Sequence record: MN871440.1
DNA: 64,000 bases
Direction: 5' to 3' (one strand)
Part shown: in pieces, positions 5,311-10,033 of the stretch
Layout: each line of letters opens with the position of its first letter
How positions within the stretch are numbered: position 1 is the stretch's first letter
Position numbers and translations under genes: made by a program
The notes under the pieces: model-generated
The model's database searches: none
What the model was told of the DNA's origin: nothing
Seen by the model: the letters and a program-made list of their open reading frames with translations, nothing else

Positions 5311-5386
5311 GCGCTGTTAGCTCAATTGGTAGAGCTGCGGACCTTTAACCGATAGGTTGGTGGATCATACCCACCACGGCGGACCA
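5311..5386 (+). tRNA. aberrant tRNA-Lys(UUU)-like
   Basis: Canonical D arm and ACCA end; loop CC-TTT-AA; stem lacks base 39; T loop ATCATAC; G1:G72. Confidence 0.6.
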
Positions 5387-5578: not shown

Positions 5579-5653
5579 AGTGAATTAGCTCAGTGGTAGA
5601 GCAAGTGCTTCATACGCACTGGGTCACTGGTTCGAATCCAGTATTCACTACCA
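5579..5653 (+). tRNA. tRNA-Met/Ile2(CAU), elongator type
   Basis: AGTGAAT/ATTCACT-ACCA; AGTGC-TT-CAT-AC-GCACT. Confidence 0.92.
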
Positions 5654-5700
5654 AATTCAATCGCGCTTAAACCTCTGACTCGTTACGTTTAAGCCTTCTC

Positions 5701-5774
5701 GGGGACGTAGATAACTTCATAATCGCAGGTCACTGGGATCTGAGATACGAGTGGAAATCCCGCCGTCTCCACCA
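5701..5774 (+). ncRNA. degenerate tRNA-like RNA (CUG loop)
   Basis: GGGGACG/CGTCTCC-ACCA; CAGGT-CACTGGG-ATCTG; no TTC T loop. Confidence 0.55.
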
Positions 5775-6285: not shown

Positions 6286-6359
6286 TGCGAGTTGGAGGAG
6301 AGGCCGTCCTCGCTGGGCTCATATCCCAGAGATCACCTGTTCGAATCAGGTACTCGCTT
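6286..6359 (+). tRNA. initiator-type tRNA-fMet(CAU), no CCA
   Basis: 1:72 mismatch; CTGGG-CT-CAT-AT-CCCAG with three G-C pairs. Confidence 0.85.
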
Positions 6360-6384
6360 CTTAGCGTACTAAATAAAGAATAAT

Positions 6385-7360: not shown

Positions 7361-7455
7361 GGAAGCGTGGCAGAGTCCGGCTTATTGCACCAGTCTTGAA
7401 AACTGACGGCGAGGTATCCCCTCGTCCATCCGTTCGAATCGGATCGCTTCCGCCA
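7361..7455 (+). tRNA. tRNA-Ser(UGA)
   Basis: GGAAGCG/CGCTTCC-GCCA; CT-TGA-AA; long variable arm. Confidence 0.95.
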
Positions 7456-7997: not shown

Positions 7998-8022
7998 AAA
8001 GGGGAGCTTCGGCTCCCTTTTT
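7998..8022 (+). terminator. intrinsic terminator
   Basis: GGGAGC-TTCG-GCTCCC then T run. Confidence 0.9.
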
Positions 8023-8037
8023 CATTAGGAGAATACA

Positions 8038-8430
8038 ATGAGTAGTTCATTTAAAGATTTCAAAGGCGATACGAACTCAAGCGTTGGTGATCTAATCTGC
8101 AAGCTGTTGAAAAGCGTGGCCTACGTTCACCACAATCATCTGGTGACGACCGTCTATAGCAGACATATGGCACTAAACGAATATTACACAAGCTTACCTG
8201 AGTTGGTAGATGCGTTTGCCGAGGCTTCTATTGCTCGCGGTTATGCTCAGACATTTTCTGTGTCACATGCGGAAGTTGAAGTTGAAATGTTGATTGACAA
8301 TTTCCTGCAAGAGTGTACTATGGTGCATGAGTATCTGGAAACCAAACGTCATTTCGATCTGGTAAATCTGTTGGAAGACATCATGAGTTTCATGAGTTCT
8401 ATTCGATACAAACTGAATCTTAAAGGTTGA
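8038..8430 (+). CDS. ferritin/Dps-like four-helix protein
   Basis: HxxHW-like HHNHL, H-x-ALNEYY, LxExxD-like ELVDAFAE. Confidence 0.7.
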   Translation: MSSSFKDFKGDTNSSVGDLICKLLKSVAYVHHNHLVTTVYSRHMALNEYYTSLPELVDAFAEASIARGYAQTFSVSHAEVEVEMLIDNFLQECTMVHEYLETKRHFDLVNLLEDIMSFMSSIRYKLNLKG

Positions 8431-8464
8431 CAACAAATAGGGACTATGTAATAATGGTTCCTAT
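8427..8464 (+). promoter_or_regulatory. sigma70-type early promoter for the split tRNA; -10 inside inverted repeat
   Basis: TTGACA 8427-8432; TG-TAATAAT; IR 8437-8464. Confidence 0.75.
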
Positions 8465-8472
8465 AAACAAAC

Positions 8473-8507
8473 GGCCCCGTAGCTAGAGGGTTCAAGCAGG
8501 CGGCTCA
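8473..8507 (+). tRNA. 5' half of split tRNA-Ile2/Met-type gene
   Basis: GGCCCCG acceptor strand, D arm, GGCGG-CT-CA, then interrupted. Confidence 0.85.
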
Positions 8508-8511
8508 CATC

Positions 8512-8550
8512 GTCTCTTAGATGTATAAATAGATTCATAATCTAGGAGAC
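8512..8550 (+). promoter_or_regulatory. RBS-sequestering hairpin with T4 late promoter in loop
   Basis: GTCTCTTAGAT/ATCTAGGAGAC 11 bp; TATAAATA 8524-8531. Confidence 0.8.
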
Positions 8551-8555
8551 ATTAA

Positions 8556-9194
8556 ATGAACTGCGTATATTGCGACAAAACATGTAAGAACACAAATTCA
8601 CTGAGACAGCATGAAATCAGGTGCTCGAAAAATCCAAATAAAATACAGTTTCATTGTCCGAGTAGAAAAGGACAGAAAGGCGGAAATAAGTACACAAAAG
8701 CCGCGAAACTTGGATTGGATAAGCCGATTATCTCAGAAGAAACCAGAAAACGATTATCGGAATCCTCTAAGATGCAAAACCAATTTAGATGGACACCCGA
8801 AGCTAGACAAAAGTTTTCTGATGTTATGAAAGCGGTTGTTAGAAACAATCCGGATTCTTACAGTAAAAATAACGTATCTGGTCGCGTTAAGATGTATACG
8901 TTTGAAGGACAAACTTTCAAAGGAAAGTGGGAATTATTGGTTGCAAAGTGCCTTAGTTCTGTTAAGATTGAATACACAAACGATGTTTCTCCATTTGAGT
9001 ATGAGTGGGAAGGAAACAAACACTTATATTTTCCTGACTTTTATCTACCTTCTCTCGATCTTTATATCGAAGTAAAAGGTTACGAGAGGGAAAGAGACAG
9101 ATGTAAGTGGAAATCGGTTGACAATCTCGTTGTCCTTAAAAGTTCACATATTAAAGAACTGGAAAGTGGTAAATCCATAATCGAGTTCTTGTGA
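8556..9194 (+). CDS. homing endonuclease: C2H2 Zn finger, NUMOD-like repeats, PD-(D/E)xK domain
   Basis: CxxC..HxxxC; SEETRKRLS; PDFYLP..LYIEVKG. Confidence 0.85.
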   Translation: MNCVYCDKTCKNTNSLRQHEIRCSKNPNKIQFHCPSRKGQKGGNKYTKAAKLGLDKPIISEETRKRLSESSKMQNQFRWTPEARQKFSDVMKAVVRNNPDSYSKNNVSGRVKMYTFEGQTFKGKWELLVAKCLSSVKIEYTNDVSPFEYEWEGNKHLYFPDFYLPSLDLYIEVKGYERERDRCKWKSVDNLVVLKSSHIKELESGKSIIEFL

Positions 9195-9198
9195 AGAA

Positions 9199-9238
9199 TA
9201 ACCGCTCGTTGTGGGTTCGATTCCCACCGGGGCAACCA
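9199..9238 (+). tRNA. 3' half of split tRNA
   Basis: TAA-CCGCT-CGTT-GTGGG-TTCGATT-CCCAC-CGGGGCA-ACCA; pairs with 8473-8507. Confidence 0.85.
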
Positions 9239-9259
9239 AATTCATTTGAGGAAATAATT

Positions 9260-9466
9260 ATGTTTTATGTTGTAATTCGCTCATTCTTTGATATAGAATA
9301 CGGTGGAGAATATAAAGAGTTCTATGCCGTTCGCACCAACAAAAAGATCGCTGAATCTGTTGTTGCTCGCGCTACAGTCGAGTATTCTGAAAAGGGATAC
9401 AGCGAAAGCTACCGTTTCTCAATGGAAGAACATACCGAAGAAAGCTTTGGTGATTTGGATGTATAA
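9260..9466 (+). CDS. hypothetical protein
   Basis: SD GAGG, ATG 9260. Confidence 0.7.
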   Translation: MFYVVIRSFFDIEYGGEYKEFYAVRTNKKIAESVVARATVEYSEKGYSESYRFSMEEHTEESFGDLDV

Positions 9467-9468
9467 TT

Positions 9469-9780
9469 ATGCATTATATCGACGTTGACAAGGACAAGAA
9501 AGTCCGATTATCTCAGTTTCAACGACTCTATCTATCTCGACTATTCCACAACGGAGATCGAGTATGTCGTTATATCAACGAAATGCATCAACAAAACAAA
9601 GTTGTCTTTGTTGCACAATCTCCGTTTAACGCGGTAGAAGACAAAAAGATGTTGATTGCCTGTGCTAGTGAGTTCGCATTCAATCGAGAACTGGCTAGAC
9701 AGAAAGACGATTTCAACTTTAAAATGCACAAGGCTTTGCACAAAGCAAACTGGGAATACGAACATGATTCTGATGATTGA
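9469..9780 (+). CDS. hypothetical protein
   Basis: Co-oriented ORF. Confidence 0.7.
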   Translation: MHYIDVDKDKKVRLSQFQRLYLSRLFHNGDRVCRYINEMHQQNKVVFVAQSPFNAVEDKKMLIACASEFAFNRELARQKDDFNFKMHKALHKANWEYEHDSDD

Positions 9781-10033
9781 AGGCTACAAAAAGAAAGTTG
9801 TTCATCAACGCTGGCAAATCGTGGCATTTCTCGCCAGAAAAGATATCGTGGACGAAGATTATCTGGAAGATTGTGCGGATGAAATTCGCGACATCATGAA
9901 AAGTGGTGCTGAATACTGCTATGGTGATTTGGATCCATATCGCCGTGAGATCAACGAAGCTCGTTGTTTGATTGTTAGTGATAACGAAGAGAAGTTAGCA
10001 GAAATGGTGGCAGACGCTGCCGAAGAGATCTAA
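9773..10033 (+). CDS. hypothetical protein
   Basis: Overlap-coupled ATG 9773. Confidence 0.7.
   Translation: MIEGYKKKVVHQRWQIVAFLARKDIVDEDYLEDCADEIRDIMKSGAEYCYGDLDPYRREINEARCLIVSDNEEKLAEMVADAAEEI

What the first reader, a model, noticed from the sequence alone, without database searches (positions are those of the whole stretch)
8473..9238. tRNA gene split inside its anticodon by a homing endonuclease, with no visible intron core
Seen: the 5' half (8473-8507, ending CT-CA) and 3' half (9199-9238, starting T-AA) rebuild a full Ile2/Met-type tRNA(CAU). They flank 691 nt that is almost entirely a Zn-finger/PD-(D/E)xK ORF (48 nt before, 4 nt after), and a dedicated promoter lies upstream. I see no group I P1/IGS or P7 elements. 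An alternative U/omega-G junction (8505/9197) would give loop CT-AAT-AA, also Ile-decoding. TCACA (8505-8509) can pair with TGTGA (9190-9194), bringing the junctions together. Knowledge: Aeh1 nrdA is split by mobE yet functional; I-Ssp6803I sits in a tRNA-fMet group I intron; T4-like phages encode Rnl/Pnk. Inference: protein-mediated tRNA splicing or assembly from halves, or a selfish insertion that destroys its own target.
Basis: partly seen in the sequence, partly recalled or inferred. Interest (0 to 1): 0.9.

Follow-up and report, generated by a model that had tools for sequence, protein, structure and literature searches.

The report
Homing endonuclease gene splits phage tRNA
A selfish "homing" nuclease gene has copied itself into the anticodon of a phage isoleucine/methionine-type tRNA gene, with nothing that could splice it out. 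Its many relatives in other phages use the same insertion point and usually bring a spare tRNA gene, so the split tRNA is most likely dead.

Summary
Window 8473-8507 and 9199-9238 are the two halves of a tRNA(CAU) that is intact at the same locus in Aeh1, avDM12-TAAL and Ah1. They flank a 691-nt insert that is almost entirely one ORF.

The insert is a free-standing homing-endonuclease cassette, not an intron:
- Its 48-nt leader is a T4-style late promoter (TATAAATA) inside a hairpin that hides the ribosome-binding site.
- The ORF encodes a zinc finger, NUMOD3-like motifs and a T7-endonuclease-I-like PD-(D/E)xK nuclease.
- Rfam finds no group I or II core here or in related inserts.

Among 97 full-length family members, the cassette characteristically follows a tRNA 5' fragment ending ...ACTC (46 of 97; C34 of a CAU anticodon loop). 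In 52 of 97 it carries a whole spare tRNA(CAU) directly behind the nuclease gene. The interrupted halves appear in all stages of decay. Acinetobacter Lazarusvirus phages show a clean presence/absence polymorphism at the same site.

In the window's clade the halves carry damaging changes (C72A here, CCA to CTA in PX29), and the PX29-type nuclease gene is a pseudogene.

Verdict: a selfish insertion that inactivates its target tRNA. RNA-level rejoining is unsupported but not excluded without RNA data. I found no description of this family in the literature I could search.

The parts
8427..8455 (+). Sigma-70-like early promoter (TTGACA, 17 nt, AATAAT, TG-extended). It overlaps the stop codon of mobD.6. 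It is ancestral to the tRNA gene and now also drives the 5' half and the endonuclease mRNA.
   Evidence: 11 of 12 matches. The same promoter precedes the intact tRNA in Aeh1.
8473..8507 (+). 5' half of tRNA(CAU), Ile2-like: acceptor strand, D arm, 5' strand of the anticodon stem, and C32 U33 C34 A35.
   Evidence: Ortholog of Aeh1 L002 1964-1998.
8508..9198 (+). Inserted homing-endonuclease cassette, 691 nt. It could equally be 8507-9197, because the junction is ambiguous by one base.
   Evidence: Absent from Aeh1, avDM12-TAAL and Ah1. Present at the same site in PX29, AsFcp_2, AsFcp_4 and L014.
8512..8550 (+). RNA hairpin (arms 8512-8522 and 8540-8550) that sequesters the Shine-Dalgarno AGGAG (8544-8548).
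   Evidence: -14.6 kcal/mol, z = -3.7. Equivalent hairpins occur in PX29 (with a compensatory G-C to A-T change), AM101 and L012.
8524..8531 (+). T4-type late promoter TATAAATA in the hairpin loop. Late transcripts would lack the 5' arm and be translatable.
   Evidence: Read directly from the sequence. TATAAATA or a close variant is visible in most printed cassette leaders. The arrangement is described for I-TevI/II/III, segB and Aeh1 mobE in PMC2988022.
8556..9194 (+). Homing endonuclease ORF, 212 aa: N-terminal CCHC zinc finger (C3, C6, H19, C23), NUMOD3-like DNA-binding motifs, and a C-terminal T7-endonuclease-I-like PD-(D/E)xK nuclease (E126, P160-D161, E172-V173-K174).
   Evidence: invariant residues; family profile against T7 endonuclease I, E = 5e-6; NUMOD3 in 3 members, DUF7487 in 29 of 34; model with mean pLDDT 88.7; only weak PD-(D/E)xK-fold matches.
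9199..9238 (+). 3' half of tRNA(CAU): U36 A37 A38, 3' strand of the anticodon stem, variable loop, T arm, acceptor strand and ACCA. Position 72 (9234) is A, which breaks the G1-C72 pair.
   Evidence: Compared with Aeh1 and PX29.

Best explanation
**What it is.** A free-standing homing endonuclease gene copied itself by DNA double-strand-break repair (homing) into the anticodon loop, after C34, of the phage's Ile2-like tRNA(CAU) gene. The window matches Aeromonas phage AsFcp_1 at 100%.

**How it most likely works.**
- The nuclease has a zinc finger, NUMOD3-like motifs and a T7-endonuclease-I-like PD-(D/E)xK domain. It most likely recognises the D-stem to anticodon-stem-loop DNA of uninterrupted tRNA(CAU) genes in co-infecting relatives (inferred).
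- It cuts there, and repair from the endonuclease-bearing genome copies the cassette in. The insertion destroys the recognition site, so the carrier is immune (inferred).
- Early transcripts from the old tRNA promoter carry the ORF with its ribosome-binding site locked in a hairpin. A late promoter inside the hairpin loop gives translatable late transcripts. This is the same regulatory logic as for I-TevI, segB and mobE.

**Consequence for the tRNA.** There is no ribozyme, so the tRNA is not rebuilt. The two halves are a young pseudogene. The phage tolerates the loss, presumably because this tRNA is dispensable when the host's own tRNA can decode AUA (inferred). Most relatives of the cassette avoid this cost by carrying a complete spare tRNA(CAU) directly behind the nuclease gene. 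The AsFcp_1/PX29, AM101 and L012 lineages are endonuclease-only versions.

**Shown:** the anatomy, the family-wide insertion point, the presence/absence polymorphism, the decay of orphan halves, and the pseudogenisation of the PX29-type allele.

**Inferred:** the cleavage specificity, homing itself, and the absence of mature tRNA.
For: 1. **Intact ortholog.** The tRNA is uninterrupted at the same locus in Aeh1, avDM12-TAAL and Ah1.
2. **No intron.** The cmscan at E <= 10 on 8300-9400, and at E <= 1 on the AM101, L012, PhaxI, L010 and PX29 loci, gives no group I or II hit. Only 52 nt are non-coding, and a promoter-plus-hairpin module fills the 48-nt leader (PMC2988022).
3. **Nuclease.** The catalytic E...PD...ExK residues and the CCHC finger are invariant in 34 relatives. 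The family profile hits T7 endonuclease I at E = 5e-6. Some members carry NUMOD3.
4. **Mobility.**
   - Nine Acinetobacter phage records of the AM101 group carry the cassette in tRNA(CAU): AM101, AB-Navy97, MD-2021a, DLP2, Apostate, AC4.
   - Many relatives with up to 99.4% identical flanks have the intact tRNA.
   - AC4 carries the cassette in a different tRNA allele.
5. **Family anatomy** (97 full-length members).
   - 46 have a significant orphan tRNA 5' fragment ending ...ACT(C), mostly 17-60 nt before the ATG (1% expected from controls).
   - 52 have a whole tRNA(CAU) directly downstream, often with the ORF's stop codon being the tRNA's U8-A9-G10.
   - At least 9 show an orphan 3' fragment after the spare tRNA (L108, L090, L024, L107, L138, L141, L103, L023, L077).
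   - Many orphans are truncated. Endonuclease-only loci with decayed or missing halves exist (L022, L066, L125, L109, L025).
6. **Window clade.**
   - Flanks are 98-100% identical to PX29, but the insert is only 75-77% identical.
   - The halves differ at 3 of 75 positions, including C72A (window) and CCA to CTA (PX29). Sixteen of 21 other tRNAs are identical.
   - PX29, AsFcp_2 and L014 carry one 99%-identical endonuclease allele with different frameshifts and stop codons.
7. **Phylogeny.** The endonuclease-only split state needs at least 2-3 origins within a mostly spare-tRNA family.
Against: - No RNA data exist, so absence of a mature tRNA is inferred, not shown.
- In three lineages (window, AM101, L012) both halves still fold into a near-perfect cloverleaf. 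I attribute this to recent homing, but continued selection would give the same picture.
- The three differences in the halves between AsFcp_1 and PX29 are too few for a rate test.
- Cleavage specificity and homing were not measured.
- Rfam models can miss atypical or ORF-embedded ribozymes.
- Twenty-seven family members have no tRNA directly downstream. Several of them have no clear orphan either, so the family is not uniform.
Confidence: 0.85

Rival explanations
1. Protein-mediated tRNA splicing. An endoribonuclease, host-encoded or phage-encoded or the PD-(D/E)xK protein itself, cuts the precursor at both junctions. The halves are held together by the acceptor and anticodon stems. A T4-type Pnk/Rnl repair pathway then seals the anticodon loop and restores tRNA(CAU).
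For: - Both halves are still near-perfect in three lineages with an intact endonuclease gene.
- T4-like phages are known to repair anticodon-loop breaks (established knowledge of T4 Pnk/Rnl1).
- The archaeal and eukaryal tRNA-splicing endonuclease has been related to the PD-(D/E)xK fold (own knowledge; the PMC3424549 abstract, lists tRNA-intron splicing among superfamily functions).
Against: - The 5' ends of the inserts are unrelated between lineages: ACATCG, ATGCTT, CTCCGC.
- The 5-bp junction pairing is not kept in PX29.
- Most relatives carry a spare tRNA and let the interrupted halves decay.
- The halves in this clade gained C72A and CCA to CTA.
- The PX29-type endonuclease is a pseudogene, so it cannot act as a maturase there.
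- In AM101, L012 and PX29 the ORF's stop codon lies inside the 3' half.
Confidence: 0.04
2. A cryptic self-splicing intron (group I-like or new) whose catalytic core is embedded in the coding sequence of the endonuclease.
For: - A U/G junction is arithmetically possible in the window and in L012. The 5' exon would end at U33 (8505) and the intron at G (9196), giving an AAU anticodon.
- Group I introns with a PD-(D/E)xK endonuclease are known in tRNA-fMet anticodon loops (Bonocora and Shub 2001, cited in PMC3984707).
Against: - No Rfam intron hit even at E <= 10.
- Only 4 nt follow the stop codon, and the promoter-plus-hairpin module takes up the 48-nt leader.
- The U/G junction would give a 6-nt loop in AM101.
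- The insert is 23-25% diverged between AsFcp_1 and PX29, with frameshifts, which does not look like a constrained ribozyme.
- Spare tRNAs and decaying orphans across the family.
Confidence: 0.02
3. The halves are not rejoined but keep some other use. The 5' half might serve as a processing or stability element of the endonuclease mRNA (RNase P or RNase E entry). It might be an operator or half-site bound by the endonuclease for autoregulation. It might be the homology arm the selfish element needs to home.
For: The orphan 5' fragment ...GGTTAGAGCA-NNNNN-CT(C) is retained next to the cassette in 46 of 97 loci. It persists even when its first ~16 nt are gone. It lies directly upstream of the late promoter. 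I-TevI is known to repress its own late promoter by binding an operator (own knowledge).
Against: - The fragment is absent or unrecognisable in about half of the loci.
- Retention can be explained by recent insertion alone.
- Nothing was tested directly.
- This rival is compatible with the best explanation, because the tRNA itself is still dead.
Confidence: 0.07

Closest known systems
I-Ssp6803I in the group I intron of cyanobacterial tRNA-fMet genes (Bonocora and Shub 2001; cited in PMC3984707)
   Same: A homing endonuclease of the PD-(D/E)xK superfamily whose gene sits in the anticodon loop of a tRNA(CAU) gene and whose target is the anticodon region of the uninterrupted gene.
   Different: That gene lies inside a self-splicing group I intron, so the tRNA is restored. 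Here no ribozyme is detectable and only 52 nt are non-coding. The family profile and the single sequence do not retrieve that protein from the PDB at E <= 10; they retrieve T7 endonuclease I. This protein also has a zinc finger and NUMOD3-like motifs.
T4 SegB, the free-standing GIY-YIG homing endonuclease of the T4 tRNA cluster (PMC2330249)
   Same: A free-standing endonuclease gene inside a phage tRNA cluster. It recognises a conserved tRNA-gene motif and drives inheritance of itself and neighbouring tRNA genes. It has the late-promoter and hairpin regulation (PMC2988022). In E. coli phage F25 the present family occupies the tRNA-Ile/tRNA-Arg interval that PMC2988022 lists as segB's insertion site in T4.
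   Different: SegB is GIY-YIG, recognises the T-psi-C stem-loop motif and sits between tRNA genes. This family is PD-(D/E)xK, is found at the anticodon loop of tRNA(CAU), and splits the gene.
Genes in pieces made by endonuclease insertion: Aeh1 nrdA/mobE, T4 gene 39/60 and mobA (PMC2988022)
   Same: A free-standing homing endonuclease gene inserted inside a functional gene of a T4-like phage without an intron or intein.
   Different: Those split proteins reassemble from two polypeptides and stay active. A tRNA broken within its anticodon has no known way to work without ligation. Relatives of this cassette compensate with a spare tRNA instead.
T7 endonuclease I (Pfam PF05367, PDB 1M0D)
   Same: The catalytic core E...PD...E-x-K aligns.
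   Different: T7 endonuclease I is a structure-specific junction resolvase without the zinc finger or NUMOD3 region. The window protein scores below Pfam's cut-off (16.6 against 29.1 bits). The Foldseek search gave only weak PD-(D/E)xK-fold matches.
Split and intron-containing tRNA genes of Archaea (Nanoarchaeum halves, bulge-helix-bulge introns)
   Same: A tRNA gene interrupted in or near the anticodon loop with no ribozyme.
   Different: Those rely on a bulge-helix-bulge motif, a dedicated splicing endonuclease and an RNA ligase, or on long complementary leaders. None of these is evident here. The only junction pairing is 5 bp and is not conserved.

Membership tests
Group I intron in a tRNA anticodon loop | Conserved catalytic core (P3-P9) recognisable by a covariance model | tested here: not met
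   No Intron_gpI or any intron family at E <= 10 in window 8300-9400. None at E <= 1 in the AM101, L012, PX29, PhaxI and L010 loci.
Group I intron in a tRNA anticodon loop | 5' exon ends in U (U.G pair in P1) and the intron ends in G, at junctions that restore the tRNA | tested here: not met
   CAU-restoring junctions end the 5' exon in C34 or A35 and the insert in A. The alternative U33/G junction gives an AAU loop in the window and L012 but a 6-nt loop in AM101.
Group I intron in a tRNA anticodon loop | Enough non-coding RNA to hold a core | tested here: not met
   48 nt before and 4 nt after the ORF. The 48 nt form the Shine-Dalgarno-sequestering hairpin with the late promoter.
Group I intron in a tRNA anticodon loop | Self-splicing of the transcript | not testable with these tools
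   Needs in vitro transcription and splicing, or RNA from infected cells.
Free-standing homing endonuclease gene (intronless homing) | Encodes a nuclease with conserved catalytic residues and DNA-binding modules | tested here: met
   E126, D161, E172, K174 and the CCHC finger are invariant in 34 relatives. T7 endonuclease I profile hit at E = 5e-6. NUMOD3 in some members.
Free-standing homing endonuclease gene (intronless homing) | Sporadic presence/absence among close relatives, with precise boundaries at one site | tested here: met
   Acinetobacter Lazarusvirus: 9 records with the cassette and many without, flanks up to 99.4% identical. Aeromonas: AsFcp_1/2/4 and PX29 with it; Aeh1, avDM12-TAAL and Ah1 without.
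Free-standing homing endonuclease gene (intronless homing) | T4-type control: late promoter inside a hairpin that hides the ribosome-binding site | tested here: met
   (z = -3.3 to -4.5 in four lineages). TATAAATA at 8524-8531. Described for I-TevI, segB and mobE in PMC2988022.
Free-standing homing endonuclease gene (intronless homing) | Site-specific cleavage of the allele lacking the gene, and super-Mendelian inheritance in mixed infection | not testable with these tools
   Needs purified protein and phage crosses.
Phage_endo_I / T7 endonuclease I family (PF05367) | Score above Pfam's gathering threshold | tested here: not met
   Window protein scores 16.6 bits against a 29.1-bit cut-off. 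22 of 34 relatives match only at E <= 0.01. Related at superfamily level only.
PD-(D/E)xK nuclease superfamily | The E...PD...(D/E)xK motif on the characteristic alpha-beta core | tested here: met
   Motif FPDFY...IEVKG. The model has mean pLDDT 88.7, with beta-strands carrying the motif. Weak but consistent Foldseek matches to PD-(D/E)xK nucleases such as Bax1, PvuRts1I, AbaSI, the I-Bth0305I catalytic domain and RecE.
Genes in pieces that stay functional (Aeh1 nrdA-mobE type) | The product of the interrupted gene remains functional | tested here: inconclusive
   No RNA data. Indirect evidence is against it: C72A and CCA to CTA in the halves, spare tRNAs and decaying orphans in relatives.
Archaeal-type split or bulge-helix-bulge-intron tRNA | Bulge-helix-bulge motif or long complementary leaders at the junctions, plus a splicing endonuclease | tested here: not met
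   Only a 5-bp TCACA/TGTGA complement, lost in PX29. No conserved junction sequence between lineages. A search for an EndA homologue was not done.

The most novel reading that the evidence does not exclude
The endonuclease-only split tRNAs (AsFcp_1, AM101 group, L012) are rejoined at the RNA level. A nuclease would cut both junctions and a T4-type Pnk/RNA-ligase step would seal the loop. That would be a ribozyme-free tRNA splicing pathway in a bacterial virus. My evidence argues against this but cannot exclude it without RNA data.

A separate and much better supported novelty (about 0.75 that it is real, and I found no description of it): this is an undescribed family of PD-(D/E)xK homing endonucleases. 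It homes into the anticodon loop of tRNA(CAU) genes and usually carries its own replacement tRNA. That would be a mechanism that moves tRNA genes between phages.
Probability: 0.04. Interest if true: 0.9.

Novelty: new variant of a known kind. Interest (0 to 1): 0.55.

Why it matters
Homing endonuclease genes are thought to persist inside genes only when an intron or intein hides them, or else to sit between genes. This family sits inside a tRNA gene with no splicing element.

Across phages of Aeromonas, Acinetobacter, Escherichia, Salmonella, Vibrio and Stenotrophomonas, and in many metagenomic contigs, it solves the cost differently. It brings a spare tRNA(CAU) and abandons the interrupted copy. 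The window shows the uncompensated form.

If confirmed, this gives three things:
- A concrete mechanism for turnover and spread of tRNA genes in phage tRNA clusters.
- A new modular nuclease scaffold (zinc finger, NUMOD3-like motifs and a T7-endonuclease-I-like core) with a long, conserved tRNA-gene target.
- A warning for annotation. Standard tRNA finders miss these split genes, and the endonuclease is often annotated only as 'endonuclease', 'endonuclease I' or hypothetical protein.

Tried and rejected
- **Single-protein scan.** The scan of viral contigs with the window protein alone found no relatives. An alignment was needed.
- **Rate test on the halves.** AsFcp_1 and PX29 are about 99% identical in the flanks, so 3 differences in 75 nt carry little statistical weight. 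I use their nature (positions 72 and 75), not their number.
- **Fold search.** It gave no match at E <= 0.001 and only weak PD-(D/E)xK-fold hits. It did not retrieve T7 endonuclease I, which the sequence profile does find.
- **False split calls.** ARAGORN's intron mode gives many false split tRNAs by joining halves of neighbouring tRNAs (L001 tRNA-His, L016, L027, L029, L051 and others). These were filtered by requiring no overlap with ordinary tRNA calls.
- **ARAGORN's junction choice.** Its default placement (37/38, anticodon CAC) was rejected in favour of the placement fixed by the intact ortholog.
- **Second tRNA copy.** A search for another intact copy of this tRNA in AsFcp_1 or PX29 showed none among the listed best matches, all >= 81% identity. 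This is not exhaustive.
- **Literature.** The CBA120 paper only notes a putative endonuclease that 'overlaps the predicted Met tRNA' (PMC3184105). Petrov et al. 2010 list two homing endonuclease genes for PX29 without mentioning this locus.
- **Assembly artefact.** Rejected. The same structure occurs in four separately deposited genomes and one metagenomic contig.
Full report
**Identity of the window.** Bases 8000-9800 are 100% identical to Aeromonas phage AsFcp_1 (MN871440). This is a T4-like myovirus related to PX29, AsFcp_2/4 (Angelvirus) and, more distantly, Aeh1. The finding lies at the right end of a cluster of more than 20 tRNA genes.

- The 5' half (8473-8507) and the 3' half (9199-9238) flank a 691-nt insert. 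The ORF 8556-9194 fills the insert except for 48 nt before and 4 nt after.
- Ordinary ARAGORN does not see the gene. With intron search it reports a tRNA at 8473..9238 with a 691-nt insert. Joining the flanks in silico gives a 75-nt tRNA(CAU).
- The decisive control is comparative. Aeh1, avDM12-TAAL and Ah1 have an uninterrupted tRNA(CAU) at exactly this place, between the same mobD.6/rI.-1 gene and the same downstream ORFs. The Aeh1 record annotates it as Ile-type if modified.
- The insertion point is after C34 or after A35; one base is ambiguous.
- The window has two other CAU tRNAs, at 5579-5653 (elongator-like) and 6286-6360 (initiator-like, with a 1:72 mismatch and GGG/CCC in the anticodon stem). 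Aeh1 has those two plus the intact third. The split gene is therefore the only Ile2-like copy seen.

**What the insert is.**
- *Protein.* The ORF has an invariant CCHC zinc finger (C3, C6, H19, C23). Its middle region resembles NUMOD3, a DNA-binding motif found in homing endonucleases. The C-terminal domain has invariant E126, P160-D161 and E172-V173-K174. A profile of 34 relatives hits T7 endonuclease I at E = 5e-6 over the catalytic core. The single sequence is below Pfam's threshold. The AlphaFold model is confident (mean pLDDT 88.7) but gives only weak PD-(D/E)xK-fold matches in the PDB.
- *Leader.* The 48-nt leader is not spare RNA. Arms 8512-8522 and 8540-8550 form an 11-bp hairpin (-14.6 kcal/mol, z = -3.7) that buries the Shine-Dalgarno AGGAG. 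The T4 late-promoter consensus TATAAATA (8524-8531) sits in its loop.
- *Conservation of the leader.* The same design is present in PX29 (with a compensatory G-C to A-T change), AM101 and L012. It is the regulation described for I-TevI/II/III, segB and Aeh1 mobE (PMC2988022).
- *No ribozyme.* Rfam finds no group I, group II or other ribozyme at E <= 10 here, or at E <= 1 in five related loci.

**The promoter.** The sigma-70-like promoter at 8427-8455 is also upstream of the intact tRNA in Aeh1. It is therefore the old tRNA promoter, not one dedicated to the insert.

**Mobility.**
- A tblastn search and a protein search show a large family, 745 proteins at E <= 1e-5. Every annotated example examined lies in a phage tRNA cluster: E. 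coli phage F25, Acinetobacter AM101, Stenotrophomonas IME13, Kuttervirus PhaxI and Vibrio phage Kuja.
- In Acinetobacter Lazarusvirus phages the cassette sits in the anticodon loop of a clean tRNA(CAU) in nine records. Many close relatives have the uninterrupted tRNA, with flanks up to 99.4% identical.
- AC4 carries the cassette in a tRNA allele with a different, fully compensated T stem. The cassette has therefore entered or recombined with more than one allele.
- A metagenomic phage (L012/L013) shows the same endonuclease-only split.
- The one junction compatible with all three lineages is CTC | insert | ATAA, that is, after C34.

**Family anatomy argues against splicing.** I collected 146 loci and found 97 full-length family members.
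- In 52 of them a complete tRNA(CAU) lies directly behind the endonuclease gene. Very often it overlaps the ORF by 10 nt, so that the stop codon is the tRNA's U8-A9-G10.
- In 46 of 97 a tRNA 5' fragment precedes the ATG, mostly ending ...ACT(C) 17-60 nt upstream. It scores above the 99th percentile of control alignments.
- In at least nine loci a matching orphan 3' fragment follows the spare tRNA. Examples are L108, L090, L024, L107, L138, L141, L103, L023 and L077.
- The usual element is therefore: orphan 5' half, then hairpin with late promoter, then endonuclease gene, then spare tRNA(CAU), then orphan 3' half.
- The orphans are found complete, 5'-truncated to about 18 nt, 3'-truncated or gone. 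Some endonuclease-only loci have halves that no longer pair, or lack the 3' half (L022, L066, L125, L109, L025).
- An interrupted tRNA that was spliced would not need a spare and would not decay.
- On a protein tree the window groups with PX29, then with L012 (split only), then less securely with L010 (spare tRNA). The split-only state needs at least 2-3 origins.

**The window's own clade.**
- AsFcp_1 and PX29 are 98-100% identical in the flanking genes, spacers and most tRNAs. The insert is only 75-77% identical. Two diverged endonuclease alleles therefore occupy the same site.
- PX29, AsFcp_2 and the metagenomic contig L014 share one allele (98.8-99.4% identical). Each carries different frameshifts and stop codons, as expected for an endonuclease gene decaying after fixation. 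AsFcp_1 has an intact allele.
- The tRNA halves differ at three of 75 positions. G27/A27 is conservative. C72A in AsFcp_1 breaks the first acceptor pair. CCA to CTA in PX29 removes the encoded 3' end. By comparison, 16 of 21 other tRNAs are identical between the two phages.
- The numbers are small, but they point to relaxed constraint rather than purifying selection.
- PX29 also lacks the small ORF 9261-9466 that AsFcp_1 and Aeh1 have.

- The TCACA/TGTGA pairing is present but only 5 bp, and PX29 has TTAAA at that place.
- The U33/G junction gives an AAU anticodon in the window and in L012, but only a 6-nt loop in AM101.
- The 5' ends of the inserts are unrelated between lineages.
- In AM101, L012 and PX29 the ORF ends at the TAA formed by U36-A37-A38 of the 3' half. 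This shows how tightly the ORF abuts the tRNA remnant.

**Mechanism proposed.**
- Shown: the anatomy, the polymorphism, the common insertion point, and the decay of orphans and of the PX29-type gene.
- Inferred: the enzyme recognises the D-stem to anticodon-stem-loop DNA of tRNA(CAU) genes, cuts near the anticodon, and is copied in by recombination-dependent repair. The insertion destroys the site. Expression is delayed to late infection by the hairpin and late-promoter device.
- In AsFcp_1 the tRNA is lost and tolerated, presumably because the host's own tRNA can decode AUA.

**Comparison with known systems.**
- The closest analogue by target is I-Ssp6803I, which lives in a group I intron.
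- The closest analogue by lifestyle is T4 SegB. It is GIY-YIG, recognises the T-loop motif and lies between tRNA genes (PMC2330249).
- The closest analogue by consequence is the mobE insertion in Aeh1 nrdA, where the product stays active (PMC2988022).
- I found no paper describing this family or a phage tRNA split in this way. The library is incomplete, so prior description cannot be excluded.

**Verdict.** The exciting interpretation, protein-mediated splicing, is not supported; I put it at about 4%. The selfish-insertion reading is well supported, at about 85%. The family-level pattern, an anticodon-targeting endonuclease that usually brings its own spare tRNA, is the more interesting result and appears to be undescribed.

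Noticed in passing
window 5700-5773: A tRNA-like sequence, GGGGACGTAGATAACTTCATAATCGC...CGTCTCCACCA. It has a 7-bp acceptor stem, ACCA and a CAU-type loop, but no normal D arm. Neither ARAGORN nor Rfam (gathering threshold) calls it.
   Followed up: no
window 5311-5383: A tRNA missed by ARAGORN but just above Rfam's threshold (31.4 bits). It corresponds to the tRNA-Lys annotated in PX29 and Aeh1 and has an unusual T loop (GGTGGATCATACCCACC).
   Followed up: partly
window 5579-5653: This tRNA-Met(CAU) is only 77% identical to the PX29 allele, while neighbouring tRNAs and spacers are 100% identical. It looks like an allele replacement inside the cluster. tRNA-Ser(UGA) at 7361-7455 is also divergent (87%).
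   Followed up: no
window 6286-6360: An initiator-like tRNA(CAU) with a T1:T72 mismatch, a GGG/CCC anticodon stem and no encoded CCA. ARAGORN calls it, Rfam at gathering threshold does not, and PX29 annotates it as 'tRNA-OTHER'.
   Followed up: no
L008 (PhaxI) about 1822-1925; L010 about 2350-2432: Structured tRNA-like RNAs that begin GGGGC... and end ...CCCCGCCA. They lie just upstream of the orphan 5' half of the cassette. This is the unannotated ~2-kb region noted for CBA120 in PMC3184105. Their nature is unknown.
   Followed up: no
L071, L085, L015, L099 (the 3' end of the endonuclease ORF and the next ~60 nt): The spare tRNA(CAU) of these cassettes has an unusual shape (GGACYCTTATCGGCTCTCGCTCATAACGAG..AAACCGTAATTGGT..., then T arm). 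ARAGORN does not find it. The ORF reads about 40-50 nt into it.
   Followed up: no
L012 1920-2038: An Rfam tRNA hit 119 nt long (57.7 bits), meaning a tRNA with an insert of about 45 nt. It lies about 380 nt upstream of the split tRNA in the same metagenomic phage.
   Followed up: no
PX29 NC_023688 101162-101261; Aeh1 NC_005260 114904-115008 (just left of the window's start): PX29 annotates a two-piece tRNA-Lys, and Aeh1 a 105-nt 'tRNA-Glu', at the same position next to gene 57B. This may be another interrupted or atypical tRNA.
   Followed up: no
Many loci, e.g. L107, L026/L136, L137, L143, L125, L015, L066, L028, L030 (17-60 nt upstream of the endonuclease ATG): When the orphan 5' half is truncated, what remains is consistently its last ~18 nt (GGTTAGAGCA-NNNNN-CTC). 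It often starts a few bases after the ACCA of the preceding tRNA. This could be a half-site kept as a homology arm or as an operator next to the late promoter. That is speculative.
   Followed up: partly
L005 (E. coli phage vB_Eco_F25) 1858-2697: In this Tequatrovirus the endonuclease lies between tRNA-Ile(CAU) and tRNA-Arg, the interval that PMC2988022 lists as segB's insertion site in T4. The ORF overlaps tRNA-Arg by 38 nt. The tRNA coordinates and strands annotated in the record do not match ARAGORN's.
   Followed up: partly
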